IMG/VR virus record: IMGVR_UViG_3300037010_001227
Span: 1 to 64,000 of that record
Strand: one strand, 5' to 3'
DNA: 64,000 nucleotides
The position numbers and the translations under genes are program-made. The notes under the pieces are model-generated. The model was not told the DNA's origin. It saw nothing but the letters and a program-made list of their open reading frames with translations, and did no database searches. Below are positions 1,173-36,359 of this stretch, piece after piece (the first letter of the stretch is position 1; each line of letters begins with the position of its first letter).

Positions 1173-1682
1173 TTAAGCTCCAGATTTTTTTAATACTTCA
1201 GTATTTTTACTGGAAATAGAAATTTTTTGTTTAACTTCATTGGGAGTTTTCCAACCAAGTTTATGTTGTTTTCCTTTGTAAGCTAATGATAATTTCTTTT
1301 TACTGTCTTCTCTATGTTTGCGTCCAGGTTTATTTAATTTTGCTATTGATTGCTTTAATTTAGTTTCGACAGATCTTTTATTGCCTAAATTAGTATTAGC
1401 CAAAGGTTTACAAGTATATCCATTTTTATAAGAATCATAATTATTACTGGCACGGTGTTCAAAAAATACTAAATCTATTATATTATAGTATAGTAACACT
1501 TTAAAATTAAAATTATCTATTTCATGCTTATTAACAGAATTTTGTAATTTACTGAAACCAGGTTTATTATTTTTTAAATCATATTTATGCTGTCTCCAAT
1601 GATTTTTAATATCTTTAGATGACCCAATATAGACTTTATTAGTGTCTATATTTCGTATTATGTAAATATCACTTTTAAACAC
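1173..1682 (-). CDS. GIY-YIG homing endonuclease with NUMOD3-like repeats
   Basis: DIYIIRN...KVYIGSS, HWRQH, RSVETKLKQS / KHREDSKKKLS motifs; GTG start. Confidence 0.8.
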   Translation of the reverse strand: MFKSDIYIIRNIDTNKVYIGSSKDIKNHWRQHKYDLKNNKPGFSKLQNSVNKHEIDNFNFKVLLYYNIIDLVFFEHRASNNYDSYKNGYTCKPLANTNLGNKRSVETKLKQSIAKLNKPGRKHREDSKKKLSLAYKGKQHKLGWKTPNEVKQKISISSKNTEVLKKSGA

Positions 1683-2517: not shown

Positions 2518-2919
2518 ATGAACGTAGATAGCTATAAATCCGCAGTAGCCAAAACTATTAATAACTTAATAGCCAGCTCAAAGAAAGAAACAACTGACGC
2601 CATTGATATGGGTGCCTTCATATCTGCTTGTAAAAAAGAATTTTTAACTTTAAAGATTCCTATTTTCAATATTAAACTATCTGAATATCGAGACAATGTT
2701 ATTGTAATAGAGCTTCCATTTTGCAAATCTTGTGAAATCGCCATTAATAGTGTTGAATTCGGTAAAGAAGATCAAGAAGTTTTACTCTATGTTGACAAGC
2801 ATATAGTTAGACGTATTCGGTTAAAAGCTTATGACGCTAAATATATGAATGAAGTAGCAATGGCCCTTGTAGATTATTTTAAACGCTACTTGTTGTTACA
2901 AAACAAATTTGAACGTTAA
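2518..2919 (+). CDS. hypothetical protein; only credible plus-strand gene in the window
   Basis: 133-aa ORF that overlaps no credible minus-strand gene and ends at a hairpin terminator. Confidence 0.65.
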   Translation: MNVDSYKSAVAKTINNLIASSKKETTDAIDMGAFISACKKEFLTLKIPIFNIKLSEYRDNVIVIELPFCKSCEIAINSVEFGKEDQEVLLYVDKHIVRRIRLKAYDAKYMNEVAMALVDYFKRYLLLQNKFER

Positions 2920-2920
2920 T

Positions 2921-2946
2921 AAAAAGCCCCTAAAACTAGGGGCTTT
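2921..2946. terminator. intrinsic terminator between convergent units; closes the radical SAM operon
   Basis: aaagcccct-aaaact-aggggcttt hairpin; U-tract on minus strand, weaker one on plus. Confidence 0.75.
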
Positions 2947-2964
2947 CGCTTTATAAAATGATTT

Positions 2965-3054
2965 TTATCTTCCAGTGCATGTTCCTGTGCAGGATGAACT
3001 ACAAGTATTACTACACGTAACATTAAGTATACTAATTAATCCTTTAAGGTATAC
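2965..3054 (-). other. start-less CXXX-repeat coding remnant or mini-peptide (VYLKGLISILNVT-CSNT-CSSS-CTGT-CTGR-stop)
   Basis: Manual translation; four Cys at exact 4-residue spacing, ends C-x-G-R-stop like the 7096-8802 protein; no in-frame ATG. Confidence 0.7.
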
Positions 3055-4171
3055 TTAATTTAAGTTCTTTTTCTTTAAGTTTACTTGCAAAATACATCTT
3101 TGCTATTGATATAGCATGAGTCCATCCGCACTGACGTTTTTCATTAACGTATTTTTCCTTATCTTCTACTTCATATATAGCTGCAACACAAGTAGGACAA
3201 GATGCTCTCAGTAAGCAAGTCTGGCACTCTTCTGGCCAAATACGTTTAAAAGTTGTTACCTCATTTAATAGTTTTGTATTTGTAATATTGATAGCATTGT
3301 CACTAAAGGTTCCTAGTTCCATACCAGGTTTATCCATAGTGCAGAATCTATTACAACCATATAATTTACCATCAATTCCTAAACAAGCCATATGAACGCA
3401 AGTTCCACACCACGAATCCTGACTAGAAGACAAAACTGGCATATAAGATTTAATATCTTCTAAAGAATTACCAAATTGAAGTAATTTGACAGTAGATTCT
3501 AGATTATTATTAACAATATAGTCGATAGTTTGTTTTAGTGGTTTAACGATGTCATAGGATAGATCTTTAGTTACAATATCTTCAAAGACTATGTTCCCAG
3601 CAATCTGAGTAAACCCTAATTTAATCAAATTTACCATACCTTCATAATAACTATTAAGATATGTCTCTACTGTGAAGGTTGCTTTTACACTTACATTCTC
3701 TTTGCCTAAAGTCTTAAATAACCAAGGTAAATATTCAATAGCATCTTCATATGAACCAGAACCATCTTTATAGATTCTATATTTATCGTGGTTTTCTTTT
3801 GTTCCATCTACAGAAACCCCAAGAGAAAAATCATTAGTTTTATATTTTTCGATTAAAGCTCTAACTTTAGGATTTTTTAATGTAGTTCCATTTGTAGTTG
3901 TAGATAGGAAAATATGCTTATTAAACTTATGCGACAACTGAAGAGCATATGAAAAAATCTCGTCACAAAGTTCAGGAAACAGAAAAGATTCTCCACCAAT
4001 CAAGTCAATAATAATATGCTTGTTTTCAATAGTTTTGAACTTAATATACATAAATGTCTTGATAGTATCAATGTCATTATGTTTCTGTTCTTTATGCTCA
4101 TAACAATAAGTGCAGTCTAAATTACAGCTTAAATTGGTAAGAATTTGAACTGTGGCTGGAATACCATTCAT
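3044..4171 (-). CDS. radical SAM/SPASM peptide maturase, CXXX-repeat-target type
   Basis: CNLDCTYC, IGGE, TTNG, SVDGTKENHDKYR..GSGSY, SPASM cysteines WCG...GCNRFC...CQTC...SCPTC...QC. Confidence 0.88.
   Translation of the reverse strand: MNGIPATVQILTNLSCNLDCTYCYEHKEQKHNDIDTIKTFMYIKFKTIENKHIIIDLIGGESFLFPELCDEIFSYALQLSHKFNKHIFLSTTTNGTTLKNPKVRALIEKYKTNDFSLGVSVDGTKENHDKYRIYKDGSGSYEDAIEYLPWLFKTLGKENVSVKATFTVETYLNSYYEGMVNLIKLGFTQIAGNIVFEDIVTKDLSYDIVKPLKQTIDYIVNNNLESTVKLLQFGNSLEDIKSYMPVLSSSQDSWCGTCVHMACLGIDGKLYGCNRFCTMDKPGMELGTFSDNAINITNTKLLNEVTTFKRIWPEECQTCLLRASCPTCVAAIYEVEDKEKYVNEKRQCGWTHAISIAKMYFASKLKEKELKLSIP
3053..3060 (-). promoter_or_regulatory. candidate late promoter AATTAAGT
   Basis: Inside the 3' end of the SPASM gene, upstream of the orphan CXXX remnant. 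Confidence 0.3.
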
Positions 4172-5589
4172 TATAACAGTCCCTTATTAAATCGTTTACA
4201 AATATCTAAATAATAATCAAAATCATTTCTGGTGGCAAATAAGTTTTCTTTACCCTCTGCAGCAAATACAATCGTATTTTTATATGTTGGATATAGCTTT
4301 TTCAATTCCATTTCAATTGCTATGACAGCAGTAATATCAAACGTTGCCTTGGTAACTTGTAAATCAATTTGAAAGGGGCACATAAAAATTCTAAATAGTT
4401 CTAAAAAGTCATTTGAAAAGTGCTCATTTGGAGAAATTGATTTTTTAATCTTTTTAGTTGTACTAGTAAGAAGTTCTTTTACTAAATCAAGATTTCTACT
4501 TTGAATAACTGCATTTTTAACTGATTTTGTATCACCATTTAAAGTATCAAAATTAACAATTAACGAAATACCATGATAATTTGTAAAAGCAACCAAAGAT
4601 TTAGTAATAGAATACCCATCAATAATTAAAGATAACTTAGCCATCGGTTGCTGAATTTTAACTGTCTGAATAATGCTTAAAAAATCATGTTCATCAATGA
4701 AATTATCCGAACAATCAAATACGATTTCTTTATATTTGGTTGCCATAGTTGCATTTAGTAATTTAGGATTAGATGCTATTAAGACATATTCTAAAACTAA
4801 TTTTGAGGGTTCCATAGGGTCTCTTCTGAAAGTGTCTACAAATTTTAAAAACTCTGTGTATTGTTCAAACGACATTGCAGTTCTGTATCCTACGCATCCT
4901 GGAAAACCTGGAACTGGTTCACATAGTTTCTCAACAGAGCCATCAGCATTTATAATCATATCTGAATAATCACATTGTTTTGTTGTATGTGTAAATGTCA
5001 ACCATTTAGTGCTTGTAGAATCTATAGTTTTTAAAGCTATTAATTCCTTTTTAATCCAATCTAATGAAATATCGTCAAATTTTTGAGTTACATCTAAAGA
5101 CAATCCAATGTTTGTATTAAATAGGATTCGCAATTGATGTAAGGTGTTACAAAGGTTTTTAGTATTTGGCAATACTATTGTAGACAAGGACAAACTGTTA
5201 ATAGTCTTTAATAACTGGGGCCATTCTTGGTTATCAGTTATAATTTTAGCATCTTCTACAGATTTCTCTCCAGTAATTCCTTGGAGACTAATAATGATAT
5301 GAATATTGTTGGCATTAATCCATGAAATAATCTCTGGTGTTAATAGTCTTCCATTAGTATTTATCGTCTTTTTGGAGTCTAGACTTAAGGAAGATATTAC
5401 CTTTTTTAACTTATCGAAGTCTAAAAAAGGTTCGCCACCAGTTATAACAGCATGTTCATAATATCCAAAAGTACTAATAGACTTTAAAATGGCTTCAATA
5501 TTCTCGCCTTTTTTAGAATCTTCTGTTTTTAAACAGAAAGAACACTGCATATTACAGTGTTCATTCAATTGTATTGTTAATATTGACAT
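4171..5589 (-). CDS. radical SAM protein with a second, motif-less radical SAM-like domain
   Basis: CNMQCSFC, TGGEP, NTNG in N-terminal half; C-terminal half aligns by eye to the same paralog family but lacks CxxxCxxC and GGE. Confidence 0.8.
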   Translation of the reverse strand: MSILTIQLNEHCNMQCSFCLKTEDSKKGENIEAILKSISTFGYYEHAVITGGEPFLDFDKLKKVISSLSLDSKKTINTNGRLLTPEIISWINANNIHIIISLQGITGEKSVEDAKIITDNQEWPQLLKTINSLSLSTIVLPNTKNLCNTLHQLRILFNTNIGLSLDVTQKFDDISLDWIKKELIALKTIDSTSTKWLTFTHTTKQCDYSDMIINADGSVEKLCEPVPGFPGCVGYRTAMSFEQYTEFLKFVDTFRRDPMEPSKLVLEYVLIASNPKLLNATMATKYKEIVFDCSDNFIDEHDFLSIIQTVKIQQPMAKLSLIIDGYSITKSLVAFTNYHGISLIVNFDTLNGDTKSVKNAVIQSRNLDLVKELLTSTTKKIKKSISPNEHFSNDFLELFRIFMCPFQIDLQVTKATFDITAVIAIEMELKKLYPTYKNTIVFAAEGKENLFATRNDFDYYLDICKRFNKGLL

Positions 5590-6263
5590 TATTTACCTGA
5601 AAGAATTTCAGCTCTCTTAGCAAAATAATCGGCCTGTAAAGCTCGTATTCTGGCTTTTTCAGCAATAATAGTAGCTGGAGTATTAGAGTTATTAATATTT
5701 CCTACTGTTAACATAGTTTTTAAATCTTCACCATATTTGTTGCAGATATTTACATCATTAAGAACTAATAGCTGAATGATTTCTGTTAAATAATCAACTT
5801 GAGCTTCTAATGTGGCAATAGACGAATAAGGATCTATTTTATAGGTAATAGTTTCAAATTTTATATCTTGTTTTTTACACTTAAAATCAAACTCTGGTAT
5901 TGTCTTAAGATAGGTAAGAAAATTAGAACATGAGTCAAAACCATGAGGTCCACAATCTAATGTTTCTGCCGTGCCACAATAAATAAACACAAAGATATCA
6001 GAACCTACTCGTAAAATAGTAGCAATATGCATATCATTTAGAGTTTTATCACTCCAAGGGAATGTACGATAGGTTTTATTTGACTCATTATAATGTAAAA
6101 AGACGCCATCAAAAGATTCTTTTAGTGGAGAGCAGTCAAAAGTATATGGTAACGTAGTTTTATAGTGATTAATCACTATAGTAGTATCATTTACTATACT
6201 TACAGAAATTACTCCAGTGTCTGTTAAATAATCAGAATTGGTAACTTTAACTAGTTTTATCAT
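5589..6263 (-). CDS. accessory protein of the radical SAM cassette
   Basis: 224 aa, coupled to neighbours; Cys cluster YCGTAETLDCGPHGFDSC and helical C-terminus. Confidence 0.7.
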   Translation of the reverse strand: MIKLVKVTNSDYLTDTGVISVSIVNDTTIVINHYKTTLPYTFDCSPLKESFDGVFLHYNESNKTYRTFPWSDKTLNDMHIATILRVGSDIFVFIYCGTAETLDCGPHGFDSCSNFLTYLKTIPEFDFKCKKQDIKFETITYKIDPYSSIATLEAQVDYLTEIIQLLVLNDVNICNKYGEDLKTMLTVGNINNSNTPATIIAEKARIRALQADYFAKRAEILSGK

Positions 6264-7089
6264 TATCTTCTTCCAAGTGAATAATTTGCATTTCCTGTTT
6301 AAAATTGTCTATTGTATCTATAAAATAATTAAGCGTTTCCATACTATCAAAACAAACCGCCTCACACTAAATCTCAACAACCATTCCAGCCCTTGACAGG
6401 TCGGTAAGGATAAGGTCTGAAAAGTAAATTAAAACATCGTTGATTACATTCTTTGTGGGCAAGTAAAAACTTTACTGACTTAAATACAGAATAAGGTACT
6501 AGTTTTTGTAATTCTGCTTTTATAAATTCTACATCAGCGGGTTTAAATTTTTTCGTGGAATCTAATGTAAGCTGAAAGGTGGCAGATGGAAACAATAAAG
6601 ACAAATCTTTAAAAGATTCTGTAAAAGTTATAGAAGCAAATACTACTTTCATAAGTTCTACTTGATCTAAATGCCGTATATGATCTATCAGAGAAAGATT
6701 TTGTGTGAGATTAATAGCATTTAATACGGATTTTTCACCTTGTAAAACATCTCTAAAACCTATGGAAAATTTTATTTTATTGTAATTAAAATAATTTACT
6801 AGTTCATTTGTTAGTAAACTACCATTTGTATACACAGACAACATCATAGTTTTTGAATGTTCTCTTACATATGTTATAGCGGGAATAAAAATTCTAAGTC
6901 TTGTAAAGGTTCTCCGCCAGTAAACGATATTACTGTATATAGATGATGTCCAAAGATGTCTTTAAACTTTTCTAACCTATCACTAGTAGATAACCTGTCT
7001 TTTCGCTCTAAAAATTCGCGTCTAGAACAAAAAGAACAGTTCATATTACATAAAAACCTAGTAAAAACAAAAAGATCGTAAACTTTCAT
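6247..7089 (-). pseudogene. radical SAM paralog broken by at least two frameshifts and one in-frame TAG
   Basis: CNMNCSFC and GGEP in 6874-7089; frame switch at a T5 run near 6890 into IPAITYVREHSKTMMLSVYTNG; second switch near 6420; TAG at 6367-6369; tail ends 6247. Confidence 0.75.
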
Positions 7090-7095
7090 AAGTTA

Positions 7096-8802
7096 TTAGC
7101 GACCTTTGCAGCCACTAGCACAATCTGCTGTGCAAGATGCAGAACAAGTTCCTGTGCAAGTTCCTTCACAACCACCTGTGCAAGTTCCTGTACAACCACC
7201 TGTGCAAGTTCCTGTGCAAGTACTAAAACAAGTTCCTGTGCAAGATGTCTGACAACCACCAGTACAGGTTGAAGAACAAGTTCCTTCACAAGTTCCTGTG
7301 CAATTTGCTGTGCAATGTCCAGTGCAAGAATTTAAACATCCTCCAGTACAAGATGTAATACAACTACCTACACAAGTATTATTACAACTACCTTTACATG
7401 TAGATAAACAAGACCAAGAACAACTACCACCACAAGTATAGAAATCGGGCGGTTGACCACCTAAAGTAACAGCATTAACATTTGTTATTTGAGAACCATC
7501 ACCAGCAAATGAGGGGGCAATGAATCTAGTGGAAGAAGCCAAGGAAACAGGATGTGTTTCATCAGCAGCTCTTCTTGATATAATAGAATCTACATCAGAC
7601 GTTCCAGAACCAAAGCTGATTTCACCACTGTATGAGATAGAAATTCTACTAAAAATATCACCGGGAACATTAGTAACCAAGGCGTCTTTGTGTAAAGGAC
7701 CTACAAAGTGGACACTAGCTGGATCTGTAACAATTAATGTGCCAGCTACTAAATTATCACCGTCTCTATTAATTTTACGATTTAACTGACTCTGAACAGG
7801 ACTTGTTACACCAGATAAAAGATTCAACTCGTCTAAATTGGTATTCATTGTAACAACTACTTTGTTAGAGTCTATACCTAAAACTCTATTAGCTGTTAAT
7901 TTATTTAACAGTAAATCAGATGTATTACTTAAAGCAATAGAGCCTGCTGTATGAGTAACTGAACCAGTCAACTGTGCAGAAGCTAAAGGAGCTTTTAAAT
8001 CTAATTGGCCTTGAATAGGAGATGTTACATTGTGAACATAAGAAAGTTCAGTAGATGTGGTTGAAGAGCTTGTTAATTTTTTATTGTTGTCTAAATAAAC
8101 AGCAGTTGAAGCAGTTAATGAAGAAACAATAAAATTATTAGATAGTGTAAGGTTGTTTGCAGCTGTTAAACCAGTTAAGTGAGCATCCAGTAATGGAGCC
8201 TTTAAGTCTAATTGACTCTGTAAAGTTATTCCAGTTGACAAATCAGATAATTGATTGATTTGATTTGTTGATACTGCGGCGCACATAATTTTGGAGCCGG
8301 TTGGATCCGAAATTAAAACCTTGTTTGTATCCAAGCCGGTTAGAGTAAATGCACCGTTACCAATAGTAACGGCAGCAGTAAAGTTTGCTGGTCCTTCTAC
8401 AGTAACATCCCCAAGAAAATCTACAGGCTTAGTAAAGTCTACGTTGTTATTAAAATATGATAGTCCAGTGAACGTAGTATTACCACTAAAAATATTATTA
8501 CCACTGAAGTTATTAGGAGCAGCAGACAGAGCAAAGTCTGACATTGTAGTGCCGTCATGACTAAAATAGAGTCTCCAAGCATTTACATTAGTATCCCAAT
8601 CACATTTAATATGTGGATTATAATTTACACCGACATTGTTTGATACCTGGAACACCAAATACTTTGGACTGTATCCTACTCCGTGTCCATTTTGTTCTCC
8701 ATCGGGGGCTCCATTAACAGCTGTTAACGGAGTTCCAATAACAAAGTCATTGTCAGGTGTTGTTGTGTATCTAAATTGACTTAATCTTAACTCACCACTC
8801 AT
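7096..8802 (-). CDS. fibre-like virion protein with C-terminal 28x Cys-X-X-X repeat (candidate radical SAM substrate)
   Basis: Fibre-type repeats (LQSQLDLKAPL, STTELSYVHNVTSPIQGQLDLKAPL, LSGVTSPVQSQLN), TLGGQPPDFY linker, then 112-aa CXXX tract. Confidence 0.8.
   Translation of the reverse strand: MSGELRLSQFRYTTTPDNDFVIGTPLTAVNGAPDGEQNGHGVGYSPKYLVFQVSNNVGVNYNPHIKCDWDTNVNAWRLYFSHDGTTMSDFALSAAPNNFSGNNIFSGNTTFTGLSYFNNNVDFTKPVDFLGDVTVEGPANFTAAVTIGNGAFTLTGLDTNKVLISDPTGSKIMCAAVSTNQINQLSDLSTGITLQSQLDLKAPLLDAHLTGLTAANNLTLSNNFIVSSLTASTAVYLDNNKKLTSSSTTSTELSYVHNVTSPIQGQLDLKAPLASAQLTGSVTHTAGSIALSNTSDLLLNKLTANRVLGIDSNKVVVTMNTNLDELNLLSGVTSPVQSQLNRKINRDGDNLVAGTLIVTDPASVHFVGPLHKDALVTNVPGDIFSRISISYSGEISFGSGTSDVDSIISRRAADETHPVSLASSTRFIAPSFAGDGSQITNVNAVTLGGQPPDFYTCGGSCSWSCLSTCKGSCNNTCVGSCITSCTGGCLNSCTGHCTANCTGTCEGTCSSTCTGGCQTSCTGTCFSTCTGTCTGGCTGTCTGGCEGTCTGTCSASCTADCASGCKGR
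7099..7434 (-). repeat. 12-nt/4-aa Cys-X-X-X coding repeat, 28 units
   Basis: Counted from CGGS to CKGR; commonest units CTGT and CTGG. Confidence 0.95.
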
Positions 8803-8834: not shown

Positions 8835-9602
8835 TTACGCGATAAAGAACTGTTGGCTTGAAGCATGGTTTGCCAGCTCTTCTCGTAAATTGGTTATCTC
8901 ATCTTTGGCTTGTGACAGCAGTTCCTGGGCATTTAAAGTTTGAGTCTCTCCAGTAGCACCAGCTATAGTTGAATATTTACCACGAACTAATCCTAGCATG
9001 TTCTTTGTAATAGCAAGGGCCATACGCTTTATCCAATAGGTTCCCCATTGATTAGATGTGGATATGGCTCCATCTTTAGACATAACGCCAAAGGCATTTT
9101 TAGAATACTCGATAATAACTGTCTGAGTGGCCTTAGGATAAGGAAATAGATAGAGTGTATTGTCAATAACTTTAAAAGTGATATCAAGACCTAAAGCTCG
9201 GTTTCTATTTTGTATATACTCATAGAATACAGCAAGATTAGCAGCACCATGAATAAAATTACCATAGCCAGCTCCTTGTAATCCTCCAAAACCACCACCG
9301 CCTCCCATAGCGAAACTAAAGATGTCTGTTGTTCCAGCCATACCGGCCATTATTTCGAAGGGCATAGCATAACAAACACTAGAGACAGTTCCTACTTCAG
9401 GAGGTAATGGAACTTCATTGTGCCCCTGAATAGCCATCGGTTGGTAGTAAGCTCTTTCTACTGCTCCAGTGGCAAGGTATTCATCCACGGCGGTGTTAAT
9501 AGCAGTATGAAGTTGAGCTTCATCTAACTCAACAGCAACAGTGGGCCAACCTAAATTAGTCAGGATGTAATTTTGAATGTCTTCTCGTTTGATTAAGCCC
9601 AT
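8835..9602 (-). CDS. neck protein, T4 gp13-like
   Basis: N-terminal IQNYILTNLGWPTVAVELDEAQL..AI..A matches the gp13 pattern; C-terminal GLVRGKY...LNAQELL. Confidence 0.8.
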   Translation of the reverse strand: MGLIKREDIQNYILTNLGWPTVAVELDEAQLHTAINTAVDEYLATGAVERAYYQPMAIQGHNEVPLPPEVGTVSSVCYAMPFEIMAGMAGTTDIFSFAMGGGGGFGGLQGAGYGNFIHGAANLAVFYEYIQNRNRALGLDITFKVIDNTLYLFPYPKATQTVIIEYSKNAFGVMSKDGAISTSNQWGTYWIKRMALAITKNMLGLVRGKYSTIAGATGETQTLNAQELLSQAKDEITNLREELANHASSQQFFIA

Positions 9603-9610
9603 TGGTAACC

Positions 9611-12040
9611 TTACTTAGCTATGTTAATTTGTAGATTTGTTGTGTTTAATACAATAATTTCGTATGGTTTAATAGGATACTCAGCGCCGAAGAGAATATC
9701 ATACTCAGAAGATAGTTTAGGAAAGTCTCTTTGAGAGTCTTTGTATCCTGGAATATCTTTAAGTTGCTTATATGTTTTAACTCCAGTTGCTAATACTGTT
9801 CCATCAGGTAAGAATGCGGAAGCCAATCCACCAACATAAATGTCAAAAGATTCTACGCCTGAAATAGCAGATAATGACTTAATGAAATCAAAGCTATTTA
9901 AACCCATACCCATTTCAAAATTATCCATTTTGAAATAGTTTGTTACAGAAGTGTAAATATCATTTCTGATTTGGCCTGATAGGTAACCAGCTTTTACTTT
10001 AACGTCTAGTCTGATATCTAAACTTCTCATTAAACCGTCAGCAACTTCAATATCAACACCAATACACTTATATTTATTTAAATAGTTACGTAATTGATAT
10101 TTTTCAGTAAGTGTTAAAGGCTGAACGGAGGTTTTATTAACTGAACTTAAGCAATACAGTCTAATAATGCTTCCATCTGAATCAGATTTAACAAGAGCAG
10201 CTGCAACTTTATAATTACTATTGAATTTTTTAGCCAGTGTAATATAATCTTCAGAACCTACTGCTCTATCTTGAGCAGCAAAGAATCGTGTTACTAATTC
10301 CTTAGAAGATTCAATAGATTCACCTTTTGACGAAGGTGCTGAAGAATATTCATTGTTTAATGAAACAATTACACCACCAATCCGAATTGACTTCTCTGAT
10401 TCGTTAGGTTTAATAATATAACCGTAACTACCAGTATTATTTACTCGATAGATAACTTTAATAGCTGCACCCTTGTCTGGGATTGCACCAAAATGACCGT
10501 CACCAAATCTAATAAAAGCATTAAAATTACCATCCCAAGTGACTTCATATACAGATTCTGCTTTATAGTAGGTATCAATATCTGCTGACAACCCAAACGC
10601 GATAACATTGTCAGATAATACCTTACCAATAGCAATCTTGTATGAAGGATTATTTTTTAAGAACTTAATAGAAGGATATTTAGTTGGATCCGCTAACTCA
10701 ATTTGAGTATCTGACACTAATTGTGGTTGTTTATATTCACCACCAATATCCTTATATTCTAATAGATAAAGAATGTCTCCAGCTGACCAAGCAATTGGTT
10801 CACCATAAATATTTGTAACTTCTGTTTCTAATGTAGTAGATGTAGCTGAATCAGTATTATCTGCAACTTTACCATAAACATATGCAGAGTGATATAATAA
10901 AAGATCAACATAATCATCACCAGCTACGGTAGAACTGGATAGATTAGAAATAATACCAATTCTATATGGAACATTTAGATTAACAAAGTCTTCATACTTG
11001 GCGATAATAGCTTCGTTATCATAATTGATAGCTAACATCATACCAACTTGAAGTAGATTGTTTTGTTTTAATCTAAAAGTCTCTTCAGATAGTTTAAAAG
11101 GAGCCAACAGGTAAGGAGTGTTTAAATTTTTTGTTGCTCCTACTTCAGTAGCAGACTTAAAGCCTGCTAATGCTAAGTAAGAAAGTTCGCCCCAAGTATT
11201 ATAAGCATACTTTCCAGGAATATTAATAGTAGTATCTTGGACTTGAACAATTATTGATGAGTTTAATACAGGTCCAGAACTTAAAGTAATGATTTGATTT
11301 GCAGTTCCATTAGATCGAAAATCTTCAACTAATGTCGTTCCACTTAATGCGAAACAAGTATATGTATTGAGTTCTTTTTCAATAGATTCTGCATCAGGAT
11401 CGTCAACTCTCACATAAGGTGGTAAAATAACATCACCTAAGTAATCAGGCTCAAAAATACCGTCTGTTAGTATAGCTGGGAATAATTCAAAGGTTTCTGA
11501 ACCAAAGGTAAGTTTTCTTCGGGCTAAACTAGAAGAAAAAATAATTTCTGAGGCATCCTCAATGTCTCTCGCTGCTGATGAATTAGCCAAAGATCTGTTT
11601 CTGGTAACTTTAAGAAGCAACACACCTTGTTGAGGACGGGAAGGTTTATATTTAAACATGTTTAAGAGTCTGTAAGTAGCGTATGCAGACTGTGAAGTGT
11701 CTAAAAATAGTTCGTTAACCATGGAATCAGTGTGATATGAAAGCATTTGACCCATGTAGGCCATCATGTTCATCATCATGCCTGAAGTGTTTGAATCTGC
11801 AAAGTCTCTTACAGAATACCCTAATTTAGCAGAATTGGCCTTAAGTAGGTTTAGTAATTGCAGTTTAATAGAACTGAAGTCTAAGTTTGTATATTCAAGA
11901 GGCGGCAGCTGAGGCTTAAATCTAAGTAGATCAATATCCAACGGAGTAACAGCGTCCGGTATATTTGGGTCTACTATAATATTTCCAGTAGAAGATACTA
12001 TATCTGTTATACTATTTGGCGTATTGTAAATTAATGTCAT
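9611..12040 (-). CDS. baseplate wedge subunit, T4 gp6/baseplate J-like
   Basis: YTNLDFSSIK..L, MAYMGQMLSYHTDSMVNELFLDT, IRFGDG..G.IP, DRAVGSEDY. Confidence 0.85.
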   Translation of the reverse strand: MTLIYNTPNSITDIVSSTGNIIVDPNIPDAVTPLDIDLLRFKPQLPPLEYTNLDFSSIKLQLLNLLKANSAKLGYSVRDFADSNTSGMMMNMMAYMGQMLSYHTDSMVNELFLDTSQSAYATYRLLNMFKYKPSRPQQGVLLLKVTRNRSLANSSAARDIEDASEIIFSSSLARRKLTFGSETFELFPAILTDGIFEPDYLGDVILPPYVRVDDPDAESIEKELNTYTCFALSGTTLVEDFRSNGTANQIITLSSGPVLNSSIIVQVQDTTINIPGKYAYNTWGELSYLALAGFKSATEVGATKNLNTPYLLAPFKLSEETFRLKQNNLLQVGMMLAINYDNEAIIAKYEDFVNLNVPYRIGIISNLSSSTVAGDDYVDLLLYHSAYVYGKVADNTDSATSTTLETEVTNIYGEPIAWSAGDILYLLEYKDIGGEYKQPQLVSDTQIELADPTKYPSIKFLKNNPSYKIAIGKVLSDNVIAFGLSADIDTYYKAESVYEVTWDGNFNAFIRFGDGHFGAIPDKGAAIKVIYRVNNTGSYGYIIKPNESEKSIRIGGVIVSLNNEYSSAPSSKGESIESSKELVTRFFAAQDRAVGSEDYITLAKKFNSNYKVAAALVKSDSDGSIIRLYCLSSVNKTSVQPLTLTEKYQLRNYLNKYKCIGVDIEVADGLMRSLDIRLDVKVKAGYLSGQIRNDIYTSVTNYFKMDNFEMGMGLNSFDFIKSLSAISGVESFDIYVGGLASAFLPDGTVLATGVKTYKQLKDIPGYKDSQRDFPKLSSEYDILFGAEYPIKPYEIIVLNTTNLQINIAK

Positions 12041-13879: not shown

Positions 13880-13887
13880 ACTTAATT
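13880..13887 (-). promoter_or_regulatory. candidate late promoter AATTAAGT
   Basis: Only 2 nt upstream of ATG 13877; atypical spacing. Confidence 0.3.
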
Positions 13888-14091
13888 TGTGTTAGCTGTC
13901 AATATGAATAAAGGGCTTGTTTTTATCTTTAAAAGCACTAAAAAATCTTCAGAAACTTGAGTAAAAATGGAAAAGTGTATTTAAAACAGATATAATACTG
14001 TAAAATCCATCCAGATTCTTTATATTTCTTGTGTAGACCAGCTAGAATAGCATCAAAAATAAGAATACTTTTCCATCATATATTCCATAGT

Positions 14092-14348
14092 TTATCGTTC
14101 AGCAACTGGAGTCCATTCTACTTCCATAGAAACAACTAAATCTGGAAGTCGTAAAGATATGAGAACCATTCTTACACCGTCTAATGCAGAAGCTTTTCCC
14201 AGAAATAGCTCCTAAGTAACACTATGTGAGTTCAAATAAGCTTTAGTAACAATATTTTGGTTGTTTGTTAATTGGATTAGCTATATTCGGAATCAAACTA
14301 TTATTAAGATTTAGATTCCGAATATACTAGGATTGGAGTTAGACTCAT
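14092..14348 (-). pseudogene. decayed small fibre-associated gene
   Basis: MSLTPILVY.. then NLNLNNSLIPNIANPIN then IVTKAYLNSH pieces in different frames, plus in-frame TAG; resembles the LNNN.I.N.A.P....D.VTKAY fibre motif. Confidence 0.55.
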
Positions 14349-14355
14349 AAATACC

Positions 14356-14899
14356 TTAGGAAAGCATTAATGTTCACGCTACTATTTCTGATAGTTGAAC
14401 ACGAACTTGTGAGATACTTGAGAAAGTTACATCAGCCCAAACCTTAACACCATCTGCGTTAATAACTTCAACATATGGGTTATGTCCGAATGAATGTGTT
14501 TGTAACCATTCTGTAGATGCTTCAACTGAGAAACTTAAAGATGCATCAGTGACTGTAATACTAACAAACACCTCTTGGCCATAACTGACCTACAGAAGGT
14601 CTTGCACCGTTACCTCCAGTTCGTTCTTTGTAGGAAGCTGGAAAAGTTGCTATGCTTACTTGGTGAGCTTGTTTTTGGCTAATAGTAGATTGGGTTTTTG
14701 CATTTAATAGTAGTTTAACCCTTGCAAATTTTGGTGTTACAATTAACCACCGATTAGCATTTGAAAATGAATTAACTGGAAATGCTTGACCAACTTTAAG
14801 AATATATGGAGATCTCTTAGGTACATTGGTTTTAATTTGTTGAGGACAGCGGATCGATAATCCCGTAGCGTCAACTAAATTTTTTACTGGTGCTGCCAT
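14356..14899 (-). pseudogene. interrupted structural gene (frameshift near 14570, TGA at 14374)
   Basis: 14561-14899 and 14374-14571 overlap in different frames; second part has a THSFGHNPYVEV domain and continues past TGA as TLMLS-stop. Confidence 0.55.
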
Positions 14900-14908
14900 T
14901 ATATATCC

Positions 14909-16798
14909 TTAAACAGGCTTTTGGTAACCAGCAAGTAGTAACCCAGTATTAATCTTAACCAACCACATAGCTACATTTACTGTAGTTCCATTTAATTGAG
15001 ATACAGGATTAGTTGCGTATTTACCACGAGTACATCCAGTAAAAGATGTTGGAGTTGTGCCAGTATATTGTATAACTTCACCATCAGCAACTATATAGCC
15101 AGTTGCAGGAAATCCTGTAGTTGATGCAACTGTTAGCGTATCATCGGTTGCTGAAGCAGTAGAAGTTATAGTAGTTGTAAAATCTGTAGATGCGGCTAAT
15201 ACCAATTGTTCATTTGCTAAGGTTCCAACATACCTATACCAATCTAAATTAGTAAGTTCTGGAACAATTCCTCTACCATTTGCACCCATTGTAAGTGTAT
15301 AAGTCCAAGTTGTATCAGAATTCATAGTTAATCTATGAATTGTATACATATTTCCATTATCTCCATCAGAAAATAATCCTTCCGATTTCATAGTTATATT
15401 AATATCAGCAAAACTAGATACGTTTCCCATAGTATCTGACACATAACCGGAAATTCCATGTTTAGTGAATACATTACAAGATTGATAGTCTGTTTCTGGA
15501 TTTAACACACCAAATCTATTGCCATAGTCAGGATAAACTACCCACCAATGTGTTATTTTACCGTATCCCCCAGTATTAGTAGCTATGTCATCATAGCCAA
15601 CTACTAGTTCAATAGGTGTAACAGGTAATAATGTGTGATCATTTGCAGGCATTTGAACAAGTGCTTCTGCGTTATTTCCATAACAAGCATGACACGGACC
15701 ATAAAAACCAGCATTTGTTTTAATAGCTAATGCGATACCTCTAGAACATACTTGAAGATAATAAATAAAACCATTTAGTAGATCAATAGTCATAGTATAA
15801 CTACGAGTTACACCAGTTCGTTGTATTTGTGGCTGAGCATATACACTTTTTGTTATAGTAGTAATGTTTGAAGTCGTAATAGTTATATTATTAGCTGGTA
15901 TCTTCTTTGTGGCTAAGAAATAAGAATAATTTGATAATCCTAATAAAGAACTAGTCCATTTCCATTCCCAAGCAAGAAAATTAGCATCCGTGCTTGTGGA
16001 TACAGCTTCAAATAAACCTCTAGCATTTTGTACTGCAGTATTCCCAGCAATACCGGTGTATGAAACTGTCACATTGTTTATTGTAATACTTAAAGTAACA
16101 GCTCCAGAGGTTGCGGCATAAAAACTATTACATTGTGGCATAGCTGTTAATAATTCTTGTATTGGAACAATAGAAATAGCAGATGAGTTACAAGAAATTT
16201 TAACTAGTTCTCTTGACACACTATTACCTATTGTTTCAGTTACTGGTGGGATAAAAAATCCATACATGTTTGTAGATACTTGATTATTTGAAGAATCTTC
16301 TAACCAAATATTAGATATCGTTGTAACTGTACCAGAAACTCTAGCTGTCACATTTAATCTCCAATAAGATTTTGCTGGAGCCCCAGTGACTGCAAAACTA
16401 CGAACTTCGGATATAACCAACCAATTATTTTCTCCTGTCCAAGTTTGGTGAGTGGTCCAAGTAGTTCCATCATCACTCCAATCTAATGTAAAATCTTTTG
16501 GAGCGGCGCTGGGAGATGATGATATTTGTATAATAAGGTTGGTAGGAGTAAATGGGTTAGCCAGTTGAACTCCTACCCACTTAGGCAACGAACTTGTTTC
16601 TGTTACTGTTGTTGTATTATCACCATCAAATACATTTCCAGGTGATGTAAAAGTTCCTAATGTAGCTACTGGAACTAGACTTTGTTTAATACATTGCCAG
16701 CCATAAGAAGTGATGGCTGTTTTTAGTGTATCTTGAACGTTTTGAACAGTAGAACCTGAAGGAATTAGAAAAGATTCAAATCCTAAGAAAGCAGACAT
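14909..16798 (-). CDS. tail-associated adhesin with discoidin (F5/8 type C)-like domain
   Basis: VFDGDNTT..WVGVQL..PKDFTLDWSDDGTTWT..YWRLNV; C-terminal LTVASTTGFP.G.I..DGEVIQYTG.T..SFTGCTRG module. Confidence 0.7.
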   Translation of the reverse strand: MSAFLGFESFLIPSGSTVQNVQDTLKTAITSYGWQCIKQSLVPVATLGTFTSPGNVFDGDNTTTVTETSSLPKWVGVQLANPFTPTNLIIQISSSPSAAPKDFTLDWSDDGTTWTTHQTWTGENNWLVISEVRSFAVTGAPAKSYWRLNVTARVSGTVTTISNIWLEDSSNNQVSTNMYGFFIPPVTETIGNSVSRELVKISCNSSAISIVPIQELLTAMPQCNSFYAATSGAVTLSITINNVTVSYTGIAGNTAVQNARGLFEAVSTSTDANFLAWEWKWTSSLLGLSNYSYFLATKKIPANNITITTSNITTITKSVYAQPQIQRTGVTRSYTMTIDLLNGFIYYLQVCSRGIALAIKTNAGFYGPCHACYGNNAEALVQMPANDHTLLPVTPIELVVGYDDIATNTGGYGKITHWWVVYPDYGNRFGVLNPETDYQSCNVFTKHGISGYVSDTMGNVSSFADINITMKSEGLFSDGDNGNMYTIHRLTMNSDTTWTYTLTMGANGRGIVPELTNLDWYRYVGTLANEQLVLAASTDFTTTITSTASATDDTLTVASTTGFPATGYIVADGEVIQYTGTTPTSFTGCTRGKYATNPVSQLNGTTVNVAMWLVKINTGLLLAGYQKPV

Positions 16799-29357: not shown

Positions 29358-32300
29358 TTAGGCTGTTATAAAATATTTTAATTTAATGTCATCGGATACG
29401 ATTAGGCGGTATCCTAAATCAGGTGATAATTCTATGTATGCAATATTATTACCAATAATGAATTTCCATGCTTTACCATAAGCATATTCAATACCGTTGA
29501 TAGTTAATACCATGTTTGGAATTACTACATCATGGTTAATAGTAGAGGTTAAATCTGTTAATGTAGTAGATGAAACTACTTCCCCAGTTTTTGGATTAAT
29601 CCAAGAAACATCTGCATTAGTTGGGATAGGGAAGCGATATAAAATACCGCTAGAAATATCGGTTATATTTTGTGTAGTTATTACTGGTGAGAAATATCTA
29701 GCATTCTCTTCTATAATTGGATTTAATACATTTAACTCCTCGTTTAAAATATTATAAGTTATTTCAATAACATCTGTTTCATATACTGGAGTTATCATTT
29801 TAAGTGCTTTTGATACGTCCATAGTAATGGTCCAAGTTTTACCATATGCCATTTGTATACCGTTCAATGTTACCATGACATTTGGAACAGCAGTTGCTGA
29901 TAAAGGGTAATTTCCAGAGTTTACATAGCTTCCAGAACCAACTTCTGTCCATACAAAATATGGATTTTTATATTTTAAATAATATGTAGATTGAGTTCTA
30001 TCAAAAACATTAAAAGTCTCTGTAGTGGCAATTAAACCCTCAATAGAGAAGTCAAAATAATCCATGCCATCATATATTAATCCTGTATTTGGTGACATTC
30101 TAATAGTCATATTACCAGCATACAAAGAAGTCAATAAATTAGTAGTGCCTGGGATATAATAAGTTGACCGATTAGCGTAATTAGTAGCATTATCATATCT
30201 AGTATCAGTGTCATTCAAGGTCCACTGTGTTTCTACTGTGTTACTAATAGAAATTTTATTTTGGTTATTCATTGTAGTATAAAAGTTTTCTACTGTAGGA
30301 ACTACAATATCAGAACTTTCAAAATCTGGATTGAAATAGGCCCTGGAAACATCTGCTTTACTAGAAGCATAAATATATTTTAAATTGGATAACTGAGAAC
30401 GAGAGATAATATCGGTTGCATAGTCCGACATATTATCAGTTCTGTTAAACAAAACTTTTTCTGACCGTCTACCTTGCAGAGTTCGTCTATTACTACCATC
30501 ATAAGCATAAGGAAGTTTTTTTGATGTTCCTCTGGTCCACATTAATTCTCTATCAGAACTGATTTTTCTAGTGGCTAAAAAATTAGCTGGATTAGTAGTA
30601 TCTAGAAGCTGAAGAGCTGTTTGCCATCTAGTAGAATTTCTGCAAGTCTCTTGAATATCATAAGAAGTATCTACAGAGAGATAAGGAATTAGATAATTTG
30701 AATTTTCATCGCCCTGCGTAGTTTGAAAATAATTTGACCACCAAGAAGGTGAGATTTTTTCACCTGTTATATATGATGTATATAAAGAAGAATAAACTTT
30801 CCATAAATGCTTGTCGCAGACATTTAAAGTATCCTTATTTACTACAGAATAATCCGGTGTAATTTTATATTGTTTTAAACTCTGCCGTGTATATACTATA
30901 GGCAAGGAAGTTTTGTATAACTTTTCATTGACAAAATCTTCTTTTAAGGTTCCTGTAACAGGATCAAATTCAAACTTTTGAGTTCCTTTAATATCTTCTG
31001 AAGATAACACAGGCACTGTATTAGAATAAGCTCTAGTGAATTTATTATTTGATCTGTTGTTGATGTACATAGAACGAGATGTTTTTTCTAGTGGAACATC
31101 ATCAACAGTTTTTGTTTTCGCAGCAAATAATACTCTAATAGAAGCATTGTTAAGGAAAGAAGCATCCGTAATAGCATTGCAATTAGTCAATTGTTTTGCA
31201 ATTGCTAAACTATCGAAGTATAATTGTTTATTATACAGCTTATAACAAGAACTATCTAAAATAAGATCTTGTGTATTATCATCAGAAGTAGTTCCACTAT
31301 ACTGGAATGCTACAATCAAAAACTCGTCTATAAGTTTTTGTAGAACATCTTTGGGAGTTGGTTTTGGTTCTATTTCTAGATCATCATAAAACCGGGTACA
31401 GTTTTTTAAATCCCATGGGTTTTTATTTACATATGATTCAACGTGACCGTTTATAGTGACAGTATCGCGTTGAGATGCATTTAAAGACTTAACTTTATCT
31501 ATTTTAACTTTTGTAGTTAAATTATATTTAAATTTTAAAAAAGATTTTAAATCTATTATTGTATTAGTTTTAAAAATATCAGAGATATCTACTTTTACAA
31601 ACTTAAAAGTTGCAGGATATCGTAAAGATTCTTCTTGAATAGTTCGTGTGTTTGTATCAACAGAAGTTCCTGGATATCCATCCCCACCATCAAAGTCTTC
31701 AGTATACCAAATATGATTATTTAAAACATTATAACCATTATTATTTTCTTCCCATACAGTTTTAATAGACAATCCAACAGTTTGCACCTCAGTAAAATCA
31801 GATACTCTTTTTGCGTTAGCTAACTTATATTGACTAAAAGATGTATAGATGGTTCCATGGTTATTATTTGAAGGAACCCAGGGTGCTACTTGATCTGTTG
31901 TAGGTAAATTAACATTTCTAAAAGAAATGGTTTCTTCTGGTTTATTCGATGTTAGATAAGCAGAGAAGTCAAAATATTCTCTATATTCTAAACACTCTGC
32001 GGCCAAATTATCATTGGTAGTTCCAAAAGTATAGTCAGCTAGACTAAATAATACATCAACATTATTGATAAAAATATGGAATGGCTTAAACTTTAATAAC
32101 ATTTCCAGTGCTGCATCTAAGTTTGTAGCAATGACATTTCCATTTGTATCAATAGAATCTAAAGCTTCATCTTTCTTTAAAACTACATTTATTCTTGGAG
32201 TTTTAGAATATCTAGATAAAGAACCTTCGCCAGTTAATGGATTGTATCCAGGTGTAGTAGCTAAAGTGCTAACGCCCGTAGATTTATCACTAGTGTTTCT

Positions 32301-32879: not shown

Positions 32880-32898
32880 TAAAGTCTCTTACGCTGAA

Positions 32899-36023: not shown

Positions 36024-36056
36024 TAAAATTCCTATTCTACAATAGCATTAAAAATT

Positions 36057-36082
36057 AATTGCCTAGCTAAAACTAGGCAATT
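36057..36082 (-). terminator. hairpin, probable terminator
   Basis: 10-bp stem aattgcctag/ctaggcaatt, 6-nt loop, followed by AATTTTT on minus strand. Confidence 0.55.
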
Positions 36083-36091
36083 TCATTTATA

Positions 36092-36343
36092 CTATGTATG
36101 TGAAGATTGTGTTCTTTTTGCGGCTTCCATTGCGTCTTTTTTAGTCTCTTCTATTTGGTATGCTCTATTGAAATAGTTCATTAAATCAATTGGTAACAAT
36201 AGTTCTGTGAATTGATACTCAGCCTTTATTGTCTGGCGCAAGTAGATTTCAATATCTATTATATCCTTGTAAACTACAAAATTGTGAAAAAAAGTATATA
36301 AGATTGAATCTATATTATCTAAAGTTTCTACTGTGAGGGGTAT
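36092..36343 (-). CDS. downstream tail-assembly partner (T4 gp51 / gpT-like); start uncertain
   Basis: Frame open to 36499 but no ATG after the upstream stop until near the end; ATA at 36341-36343 has GGAG 5 nt upstream. Confidence 0.55.
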   Translation of the reverse strand: MPLTVETLDNIDSILYTFFHNFVVYKDIIDIEIYLRQTIKAEYQFTELLLPIDLMNYFNRAYQIEETKKDAMEAAKRTQSSHT

Positions 36344-36359
36344 GTCTGCTCCGAAAATA

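What the first reader, a model, noticed from the sequence alone, without database searches (positions are those of the whole stretch)
2965..8802. Phage RiPP-like system: a virion fibre ending in 28 Cys-X-X-X repeats with its own radical SAM maturases
Seen: a 568-aa protein with fibre-type repeats carries a 112-aa C-terminal tract with Cys every fourth residue, rich in Thr, Gly and Ser. It is followed in one coupled operon by three CxxxCxxC radical SAM genes (one with a full SPASM cysteine set) and an accessory gene, closed by a terminator. Established: radical SAM/SPASM enzymes form Cys-to-carbon thioethers on Cys-rich substrates (CteB on SCIFF peptides, PapB on CX3D, QhpD on QhpC). From memory, to be verified, TIGR04114/TIGR04115 describe bacterial CXXX-repeat targets and their maturases. 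Inference: here the core is fused to a structural protein rather than a short leader peptide, so the phage may build a thioether-stapled, protease-resistant or metal-binding fibre tip. O2-sensitive enzymes would suggest an anaerobic host. I know of no characterised example but could not search.
Basis: partly seen in the sequence, partly recalled or inferred. Interest (0 to 1): 0.92.

Follow-up and report, generated by a model that had tools for sequence, protein, structure and literature searches.

The report
Phage fibre tip with radical-SAM maturases
A giant phage ends one of its fibre proteins in 28 cysteine-every-fourth-residue repeats and encodes, right behind it, radical SAM enzymes of the kind that staple cysteine-rich peptides. 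The same uncharacterised cassette also sits in cultured Salmonella and Erwinia jumbo phages, where it could be tested.

Summary
ORF 7096-8802 (-) is a 568-aa fibre-like protein whose last 112 residues carry 28 Cys at strict period 4. It is followed by radical SAM genes, an accessory gene and a real terminator.

Corrections:
- The first radical SAM gene is broken in at least two places; a close relative has it intact.
- The 472-aa gene is a paralogue of that partner enzyme.
- A 17-codon orphan CXXX fragment follows the SPASM gene.

The tract passes TIGR04114 (20.7 bits, cut-off 20). The 375-aa SPASM enzyme hits TIGR04115 best but below cut-off (157 vs 350). It belongs to a phage-only clade next to the bacterial CXXX maturases.

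The cassette recurs in myo-, sipho- and T7-fibre contexts, including SPN3US-like jumbo phages. It consists of a CXXX tail with a conserved junction motif, a short radical SAM partner and a SPASM enzyme. All 9 loci found through the junction motif that had enough flank carry the enzyme.

The anaerobic-host inference is not supported.

The most likely mechanism is enzymatic S-C cross-bracing of a fibre tip without leader removal. The chemistry is inferred, not shown. I found no publication on it. I rate it a new variant of a known, bioinformatically defined kind.

The parts
9611..12040 (-). Baseplate wedge (gp6/J-like), 809 aa. Context: places the cassette at the end of the tail/baseplate block.
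   Evidence: TIGR02243 at 8e-14, PF04865, phrog_219.
8835..9602 (-). 255-aa structural protein directly upstream of the fibre (T4 gp13-like / phrog_211).
   Evidence: phrog_211 at 1e-17. PF26809 is precomputed for the orthologues in L003 and L219.
7096..8802 (-). 568-aa fibre-like protein. It has an N-terminal domain shared with CXXX-less fibres, three fibre repeats, a junction motif and a CXXX tail.
   Evidence: 32% identity to the L003 494-aa protein; P0122 at 80% identity; P0124 and P0128 share the N-terminus but have other C-termini.
7435..7482 (-). Conserved junction motif (N-A-x-x-L-x-G-x5-Y-x) immediately before the first Cys. Together with C-x3-C-S-W-S/T-C it is the proposed recognition element.
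   Evidence: Alignments A1, A5 and A9. phrog_6085 matches residues 443-531.
7099..7434 (-). CXXX tract: 28 Cys at period 4 (residues 457-568). It also shows 12/24-nt periodicity at DNA level.
   Evidence: TIGR04114 scores 20.7 bits against a cut-off of 20.
6874..7089 (-). Partner radical SAM gene, piece 1 (71 aa, CxxxCxxC and GGE motifs).
   Evidence: PF04055 at 4e-8. Matches residues 2-68 of the intact L003 273-aa enzyme.
6374..6847 (-). Partner radical SAM gene, piece 2 (157 aa), in another frame. There is a one-base gap relative to L219 near 6884/6883.
   Evidence: Matches residues 83-245 of the L003 enzyme at E 4e-24. DNA alignment.
6264..6373 (-). Out-of-frame 3' remnant of the same gene after a premature TGA and a 7-nt indel.
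   Evidence: DNA alignment to L219. Translation of the intact L219 gene.
5589..6263 (-). 224-aa accessory protein with an N-terminal beta domain and a C-terminal helical part. No family assignment.
   Evidence: No Pfam, NCBIfam or PHROG hit. Orthologues in L219 (75% identity) and L003 (22% identity, E 1e-13). AF2 pLDDT 66, with only a weak match to SPP1 gp22.
4171..5589 (-). 472-aa radical SAM protein: a paralogue of the partner enzyme (residues 9-257) plus a second, cluster-less partial copy (residues 298-402).
   Evidence: PF04055. BLASTP to the L219 282-aa enzyme gives E 2e-23 and 7e-7.
3044..4171 (-). 375-aa radical SAM/SPASM maturase of a phage-specific clade related to TIGR04115. It has no N-terminal RRE domain.
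   Evidence: TIGR04115 157 bits, PapB 151 bits. CteB 5WGG at E 1e-18, aligned to chain residues 105-421. Invariant Cys. Tree.
2965..3018 (-). Orphan CXXX fragment: 17 codons with 4 Cys at period 4, ending G-R-stop as the fibre does. There is no ATG/GTG/TTG start.
2922..2947 (-). Intrinsic terminator hairpin between convergent genes.
   Evidence: -16.9 kcal/mol.

Best explanation
The window is the late structural block of a roughly 213-kb myovirus. Its last structural gene encodes a fibre whose distal module is the phage form of the 'CXXX-repeat radical-SAM target'. That module is a conserved junction motif followed by 28 C-[T/S]-G-[T/S/G] units.

Proposed mechanism, inferred by homology to CteB, PapB and QhpD:
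1. In the infected cell the 375-aa radical SAM/SPASM enzyme recognises the junction. It lacks the N-terminal peptide-binding domain of CteB.
2. It works along the tail. SAM-derived radicals abstract hydrogen from carbons of neighbouring Gly/Ser/Thr residues, and the Cys sulfurs are joined to them as thioether (S-C) bridges.
3. A second, non-SPASM radical SAM partner, always present in this cassette, performs a second step or a subset of sites. Here it exists as one broken copy and one intact duplicated paralogue.
4. No protease or exporter is present, so the modified tail most likely stays on the protein, as in QhpC. This would turn an otherwise unfoldable, low-complexity tail into a covalently cross-braced tip of the fibre.

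Shown: the anatomy, the homologies and the conserved linkage.
Inferred: the substrate-enzyme relation (about 0.8), the thioether chemistry (about 0.45) and incorporation into virions (about 0.7).
For: - Tail passes TIGR04114, and the enzyme's best hit is TIGR04115.
- The closest solved structure is the thioether-forming CteB, followed by anSME.
- SPASM cysteines are invariant.
- Phage enzymes form one clade (support 100) inside a clade (support 95) with bacterial CXXX-linked enzymes. All 10 bacterial loci with CXXX ORFs fall there and none of the 63 others do.
- The CXXX protein, the short radical SAM partner and the SPASM enzyme are syntenic in SPN3US, Erwinia phage EarlPhillipIV and metagenomic loci L003-L008, L129, L131-L136, L138 and L219.
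- All 9 loci found via the junction motif with enough flank carry the SPASM enzyme 1-3 kb away.
- Neighbours are fibre or baseplate genes in several tail types: GpJ in L004, a T7 tail-fibre domain in L006, collagen in L007.
- The fibre N-terminus is shared with fibres that have other tips.
- All Cys are kept between the window and the 80%-identical L219 fibre.
- AF2 finds no fold for the unmodified tail.
Against: - No experiment exists for any CXXX system that I could find.
- The enzyme is far below the TIGR04115 and PapB cut-offs.
- The bacterial partner domain TIGR04119 is absent from the phage accessory proteins that were scanned.
- No conserved Asp/Glu/Asn acceptor residue like those of PapB, QhpD or NxxcB is present.
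- In the SPN3US virion proteome, products numbered 161-166 were not reported, while gp167-170 were (PMC5694885). This is weak evidence: RefSeq leaves one CXXX ORF unannotated and calls another in the wrong frame, and cross-linked Cys-rich peptides are hard to detect.
- One partner gene is broken in this assembly.
Confidence: 0.55

Rival explanations
1. The SPASM enzyme does modify the CXXX tail, but by other chemistry. Options are oxidation of Cys to formylglycine as in anaerobic sulfatase maturases, epimerisation, or C-C/ether links. The tip would then be reactive or differently cross-linked rather than thioether-stapled.
For: - anSME is the second-best solved relative and appears among the family hits.
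- No conserved acceptor residue defines a thioether ring.
- Two different radical SAM enzymes are always present, which suggests two chemistries.
Against: - The best families and the best structure are thioether formers acting on Cys-rich substrates: TIGR04115, PapB, QhpD, SCIFF and CteB.
- The anSME family score is only 65 bits.
Confidence: 0.15
2. The CXXX tail is a metal-thiolate, Fe-S or disulfide ladder in a trimeric fibre tip, analogous to the His-coordinated iron needle of the T4 long tail fibre. The radical SAM genes serve another purpose or only assist folding.
For: - Cys at a strict period with small residues could stack in a trimer.
- AF2 gives no monomer fold.
- Metal-stabilised fibre tips are known from established knowledge of T4 gp37. 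That point is from memory and was not tested here.
Against: - It does not explain the strict co-occurrence with a peptide-maturase-type SPASM enzyme across unrelated phages and in bacteria.
- Cytoplasmic assembly argues against disulfides.
Confidence: 0.12
3. The cassette is decaying or inactive in this particular phage. One radical SAM gene is a pseudogene and an orphan CXXX fragment is left over.
For: - Two independent lesions in the partner gene.
- An orphan fragment without a start codon.
Against: - The SPASM gene, the 472-aa paralogue, the accessory gene and all 28 Cys are intact.
- The genes are translationally coupled.
- The relative L219 keeps the same order.
- The lesions could be assembly errors.
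Confidence: 0.08
4. The protein is not a virion part but a very large precursor. Its modified C-terminal peptide would be released as a RiPP-like effector, for example against competitors or host defences.
For: - Bacterial relatives are short leader-core precursors of 60-110 aa.
- The SPN3US small CXXX proteins were not reported in virions.
Against: - No protease, exporter or immunity gene is in the cassette.
- The gene sits at the end of the baseplate block.
- It has fibre repeats and an N-terminal domain shared with other fibres.
Confidence: 0.05

Closest known systems
Bacterial CXXX-repeat peptide system (TIGR04114 target, TIGR04115 radical SAM/SPASM maturase, TIGR04119 second maturase domain). 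It is defined bioinformatically, and I found no characterisation.
   Same: - Cys every fourth residue with small residues between.
- An adjacent radical SAM/SPASM enzyme without an N-terminal RRE.
- The enzymes are neighbouring clades in the tree.
   Different: - Phage enzymes score 127-166 bits against 506-513 for true members (cut-off 350).
- No TIGR04119 partner. A canonical short radical SAM partner takes its place.
- A phage-specific junction motif (Y-Y-x-C-x3-C-S-W-T-C).
- The target is the C-terminus of a 568-aa fibre-like protein rather than a 60-110-aa precursor.
Cassette of SPN3US-like jumbo phages (Seoulvirus, Derbicusvirus and relatives): phrog_6085 small Cys-rich proteins plus two 'radical SAM domain proteins' (phrog_1802).
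   Same: - Homologous SPASM enzyme at 35-37% identity.
- Same junction motif and the same partner radical SAM.
- Location beside tail-fibre genes.
   Different: - There the CXXX module is on 130-150-aa proteins, usually in two copies, and is not fused to a long fibre.
- The enzymes have roughly 70 extra C-terminal residues.
- The function is unannotated, and the ORFs are partly missed or called in the wrong frame in RefSeq.
PapB / freyrasin ranthipeptide system
   Same: Second-best family hit (151 bits). A SPASM enzyme makes several Cys-to-carbon thioethers in a repeated motif (chemistry from established knowledge).
   Different: - Below the cut-off of 340.
- PapB needs Cys-X3-Asp/Glu, whereas here the +4 residue is the next Cys and acidic residues are rare.
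CteB / SCIFF (PDB 5WGG)
   Same: Best solved relative, E 1e-18 over the radical SAM and SPASM domains.
   Different: - The phage enzyme lacks the first roughly 100 residues of CteB, its peptide-recognition domain.
- The SCIFF family score is 86 against a cut-off of 425.
QhpD acting on QhpC (quinohemoprotein amine dehydrogenase)
   Same: A radical SAM/SPASM enzyme cross-links Cys in a protein subunit that stays in the final assembly without leader removal. This is the closest analogy for 'works like' (family hit 89 bits; biology from established knowledge).
   Different: - Score far below the cut-off of 453.
- QhpC has few Cys, linked to Asp/Glu.
- There is no viral context.

Membership tests
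TIGR04114 / PF27846 CXXX-repeat radical-SAM target | Repeated Cys at period 4, recognised by the family model | tested here: met
   28 units. TIGR04114 scores 20.7 bits against a cut-off of 20. PF27846 is precomputed for this protein and its relatives.
TIGR04114 / PF27846 CXXX-repeat radical-SAM target | Short leader-core precursor architecture, as in the bacterial members seen here (60-110 aa) | tested here: not met
   The protein is 568 aa with fibre repeats. Bacterial precursors are described.
TIGR04115 CXXX-repeat radical SAM maturase | CxxxCxxC cluster plus SPASM cysteine set | tested here: met
   C16/C20/C23 and C255, C273, C316, C319, C325, C328 and C348 are invariant. TIGR04085 covers the full profile at 24.6 bits (cut-off 27).
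TIGR04115 CXXX-repeat radical SAM maturase | Score at or above the curated cut-off (350 bits) | tested here: not met
   157 bits. True members L142 and L148 score 513 and 506, while other phage enzymes score 127-166.
TIGR04115 CXXX-repeat radical SAM maturase | Falls inside the clade of CXXX-linked enzymes | tested here: inconclusive
   The phage clade (support 100) lies within a 95-supported clade that also holds bacterial CXXX-linked enzymes, but as a separate branch. This was a quick tree with midpoint rooting.
Bacterial CXXX system as a whole | Second maturase domain TIGR04119, fused or adjacent | tested here: not met
   L142 and L148 carry it (235-258 bits). No hit in the phage accessory proteins scanned (window 224 aa and the C-terminal half of the 472-aa protein; L001, L003, L004, L005, L007, L008), even at E up to 10.
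PapB-type ranthipeptide maturase | Family cut-off of 340 bits and a Cys-X3-Asp/Glu substrate motif | tested here: not met
   151 bits. The +4 residue is always Cys, and Asp/Glu are 7% or less at positions +1 to +3.
SCIFF maturase (CteB) | Family cut-off of 425 bits and an N-terminal peptide-recognition domain | tested here: not met
   86 bits. The alignment starts at CteB residue 105 and enzyme residue 14.
RiPP in the strict sense | Leader removal and release of a small product (protease and/or exporter in the cluster) | tested here: not met
   No such gene lies between 2965 and 8802.
Virion fibre | Physical presence in the particle | not testable with these tools
   Only context is available: the end of the baseplate block, fibre repeats and a shared N-terminal domain. 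The SPN3US proteome is uninformative for the small CXXX proteins.

The most novel reading that the evidence does not exclude
Radical-SAM enzymes install a ladder of covalent S-C cross-links in the tips of virion fibres. This would be a RiPP-type maturation applied to a viral structural protein. It would be present in a scattered but widespread set of phages, including cultured jumbo phages of Salmonella and Erwinia, and would matter for adsorption or particle stability.
Probability: 0.45. Interest if true: 0.85.

Novelty: new variant of a known kind. Interest (0 to 1): 0.76.

Why it matters
No CXXX-repeat radical SAM system, bacterial or viral, appears to have been characterised. No virion protein is known to me to be matured by a radical SAM/SPASM enzyme.

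If the tail is really cross-linked enzymatically, three things follow:
- It adds a new kind of post-translational modification to phage structural biology.
- It gives a natural example of RiPP chemistry acting on a large protein without leader removal.
- It explains two long-unexplained 'radical SAM' genes and several missed small ORFs in well-studied jumbo phages (SPN3US, the Erwinia phages).

Because those phages are in culture and SPN3US has a genetic system, the question is directly testable.

Tried and rejected
1. A degenerate DNA pattern for C-S-W-x-C-(x3-C)4 in viral contigs returned 120 loci. Almost all were low-complexity DNA read in a Cys/Trp frame. Only L009 and L099 were real, so the scan is useless for a census.
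Narrower alignments gave only 6 and 4 loci, so the co-occurrence test rests on 9 partly related loci.
3. AF2 of the C-terminal 154 aa with 17 sequences gave pLDDT 40 and no fold.
4. AF2 of the 224-aa accessory gave pLDDT 66. The best PDB match, SPP1 gp22, has E 0.03 and is not significant. There is no sign of an RRE fold.
5. A profile comparison of the 224-aa family with the proteins in the same position in other loci found no relation. A word-indexed search found only close relatives.
6. No link was found between TIGR04119 and the phage partner enzymes.
7. Reading TGA as Gly at the second lesion of the broken gene does not restore the conserved C-terminus. All long ORFs are open under table 11.
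8. Eight literature searches found nothing on CXXX repeats or on these phage genes. The 2011 paper that I recall as defining the TIGR families was not retrievable under the id I tried.
Full report
**1. What is in the sequence**

The window comes from IMG/VR contig IMGVR_UViG_3300037010_001227, 213 kb, with G+C about 0.33. Nearly all long ORFs lie on the minus strand. They form a myovirus late block:
- terminase, 58461-60446
- portal, 56517-58430
- major head protein, 51485-53026
- tail sheath, 47590-50283
- baseplate wedge, 9611-12040

The finding is the last part of that block.

ORF 7096-8802 encodes 568 aa. From residue 457 to 565 every fourth residue is Cys, giving 28 Cys in a 112-aa tract. 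The unit is C-[T/S]-G-[T/S/G]. At DNA level the tract shows 12- and 24-nt periodicity. In all six frames of the 64 kb, the only other Cx3Cx3Cx3C run is a short fragment next to the SPASM gene, so chance is excluded.

Upstream of the tract the protein has three roughly 50-75-aa repeats of a type found in other fibre-like proteins. Its N-terminal domain recurs in proteins P0124 and P0128, which have quite different C-termini without Cys repeats. The CXXX tail therefore behaves as an exchangeable distal module of a fibre.

**2. The genes behind it**

- *First radical SAM gene, 6874-7089.* It starts six bases after the fibre stop and has CxxxCxxC and GGE motifs, but the ORF stops after 71 codons. 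The rest continues in another frame at 6374-6847. The two pieces match residues 2-68 and 83-245 of an intact 273-aa enzyme in relative L003. In L219, whose fibre is 80% identical and whose gene order is the same, the gene is intact at 282 aa. Against L219 the window has a one-base gap near 6884/6883. It also has a premature TGA with a 7-nt indel near 6360-6376, which leaves the conserved last roughly 35 codons out of frame. Two lesions point to real decay rather than a single sequencing slip, but only the reads can decide.
- *Accessory gene, 5589-6263.* It encodes 224 aa with no family hit. Orthologues exist in L219 and L003.
- *Second radical SAM gene, 4171-5589.* It encodes 472 aa. Residues 9-257 are a paralogue of the partner enzyme (30% identity, E 2e-23). 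Residues 298-402 repeat part of it without the cluster motif.
- *SPASM gene, 3044-4171.* This is the 375-aa radical SAM/SPASM enzyme.
- *Coupling and termination.* Starts and stops overlap by one base at 5589 and 4171. A strong hairpin with a U tail at 2922-2947 ends the operon.
- *Orphan fragment, 2965-3018.* Between the SPASM stop and the terminator, in another frame, lie 17 codons with four Cys at period 4. They end G-R-stop like the fibre and have no canonical start codon.

**3. Family assignments**

The tail passes TIGR04114 at 20.7 bits against a cut-off of 20. It also matches phrog_6085, a family of roughly 130-aa proteins of unknown function.

For the SPASM enzyme:
- The best hits are TIGR04115 (157 bits, cut-off 350) and PapB (151 bits, cut-off 340).
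- The closest solved structure is the thioether-forming CteB, then anSME. The alignment begins at CteB residue 105, so the phage enzyme lacks CteB's N-terminal peptide-binding domain.
- The radical SAM and SPASM cysteines are invariant across 28 homologues.
- The SPASM domain model covers its full length, just below its cut-off.

Genuine bacterial TIGR04115 members (Lachnotalea, Clostridiaceae) score 506-513 bits. They are fused to a second domain, TIGR04119. That domain was not detectable in the phage accessory proteins scanned.

In a tree of 109 sequences, 28 phage-type enzymes form one clade with support 100. That clade lies inside a 95-supported clade shared with bacterial enzymes whose loci encode CXXX proteins. 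All 10 such bacterial loci lie in this part of the tree, and none of the 63 other SPASM loci do.

The phage enzyme is therefore a close relative of the CXXX maturases, but not a member by the curated threshold.

**4. The same cassette elsewhere**

Homologues of the SPASM enzyme at 35-37% identity occur in 104 phage records. These include the SPN3US-like jumbo phages of Salmonella, E. coli, Erwinia, Cronobacter, Proteus and Klebsiella.

In SPN3US the order is as follows:
1. a 5.2-kb fibre gene
2. a 412-aa virion protein
3. two roughly 130-aa ORFs with CXXX tails, plus a third truncated one
4. a 295-aa protein
5. a 304-aa radical SAM protein
6. the 442-aa SPASM enzyme

RefSeq misses the first small ORF and calls the second in a wrong frame. 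Erwinia phage EarlPhillipIV has the same layout.

Metagenomic loci carry the cassette in several tail contexts:
- next to a GpJ-type central fibre of a siphovirus-like tail (L004)
- next to a T7-type fibre domain (L006)
- on a collagen-repeat protein in an integrase-bearing element (L007)
- with four CXXX proteins of up to 87 Cys (L005)

All share a junction: N-A-x-x-L-x-G-x5-Y-(Y)-x-C-x(2-3)-C-S-W-T/S-C. Bacterial precursors lack it.

Searching with the junction found 10 loci. All 9 with enough flank have the SPASM enzyme 1-3 kb downstream together with a short radical SAM partner.

A profile of the junction against 1.84 billion representatives gave only 92 hits at E up to 0.001. Lengths of the junction-type hits run from about 50 to 570 aa and are typically 200-300 aa. 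The family is rare, and the window protein is among the longest.

**5. Mechanism**

The conserved unit is a CXXX tail with junction, a SPASM enzyme and a non-SPASM radical SAM partner, set in a fibre module.

By homology the SPASM enzyme most likely makes Cys sulfur-to-carbon bridges. The junction is the only conserved non-repeat element, and the enzyme has no RRE domain, so I propose the junction as the recognition site. No protease or exporter is present, so the product most likely stays part of the fibre, as QhpC does after QhpD. AF2 gives no fold for the unmodified tail. That is compatible with a segment that becomes ordered only after cross-linking or trimerisation, but it proves nothing.

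Still inferred:
- which carbon is attacked
- whether links are within or between chains
- what the second enzyme does

The rivals are other chemistry, a metal or disulfide ladder, a decaying cassette, or a released peptide. They are listed with their tests in the rival explanations.

**6.

The anaerobic-host idea is not supported. The same cassette works, or is at least maintained, in phages propagated in air on Enterobacterales.

Virion location is plausible but not shown. In the SPN3US virion proteome, gp167-170 were found and 161-166 were not (PMC5694885). However, the small ORFs were mis-annotated, and cross-linked Cys-rich peptides would escape a standard search.

**7. Novelty**

Families for the bacterial system exist (TIGR04114, TIGR04115, TIGR04119, PF27846), as do unnamed PHROGs for the phage proteins. 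I found no experimental or descriptive paper on either in the searchable library.

Three features make this a new variant of a known, purely bioinformatic kind:
- the phage clade with its own junction motif
- a different partner enzyme
- attachment to fibre proteins

It is experimentally open.

Noticed in passing
window 2965-3018 (-): Orphan 17-codon CXXX fragment (four Cys at period 4, ending G-R-stop like the fibre). It lies just after the SPASM stop in another frame and has no ATG/GTG/TTG start. It could be a relic of a lost small precursor gene, or be reached by frameshifting or a non-canonical start.
   Followed up: partly
window 3022-3032 / 3049-3059: A perfect 11-bp inverted repeat brackets the SPASM stop codon and abuts the orphan fragment. 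As RNA it folds at -9.8 kcal/mol, z -2.5. Its meaning is unknown.
   Followed up: partly
window 6360-6376 (-): At the second lesion of the broken radical SAM gene, a TGA stands where the L219 orthologue has a Gly codon. A 7-nt indel follows, and the conserved C-terminal codons continue out of frame up to the start of the 224-aa gene.
   Followed up: partly
L001 (SPN3US, NC_027402) 5100-5492, 5503-5907, 5971-6126: RefSeq leaves the first CXXX ORF unannotated. It annotates an overlapping wrong-frame ORF (5576-5911) in place of the second. A third 73-codon ORF has the junction motif but only a stub of repeats.
   Followed up: partly
L005 (ENA ERZ27319769 k141_19234) 992-2590, 2742-3668, 13885-14997, 15056-16666: One jumbo-phage-like locus carries four CXXX proteins of 308-536 aa with up to 87 Cys around a radical SAM pair. 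Its SPASM enzyme is 594 aa.
   Followed up: no
L139-L141 (Margulisiibacteriota / Termititenax MAGs): Bacterial proteins of 667-672 aa with 14 to 60 consecutive CXXX units sit next to a TIGR04115-like enzyme (267 bits). Fusion of the repeat to large proteins is therefore not phage-specific.
   Followed up: partly
P0007 contig (ENA ERZ1426824, no DNA held): A relative at 53% identity has the SPASM enzyme as a 634-aa protein with a faint cytidylyltransferase-type hit. Two further radical SAM genes and a Ro60/TROVE-vWA gene lie nearby.
   Followed up: no
window 62184-62270 (-): tRNA-Thr (anticodon TGT), unusually long at 87 nt. The fibre tail is Thr-rich, but no link was tested.
   Followed up: no
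window 1173-1682 (-): A 169-aa ORF with GTG start reads like a GIY-YIG homing endonuclease, judging by its N-terminal motif only. It lies between small ORFs beyond the convergent terminator. No family search was run on it.
   Followed up: no
window 29358-46365 (-): Six large ORFs of 422-1173 aa in the middle of the structural block have no PHROG match at E up to 1e-5.
   Followed up: no
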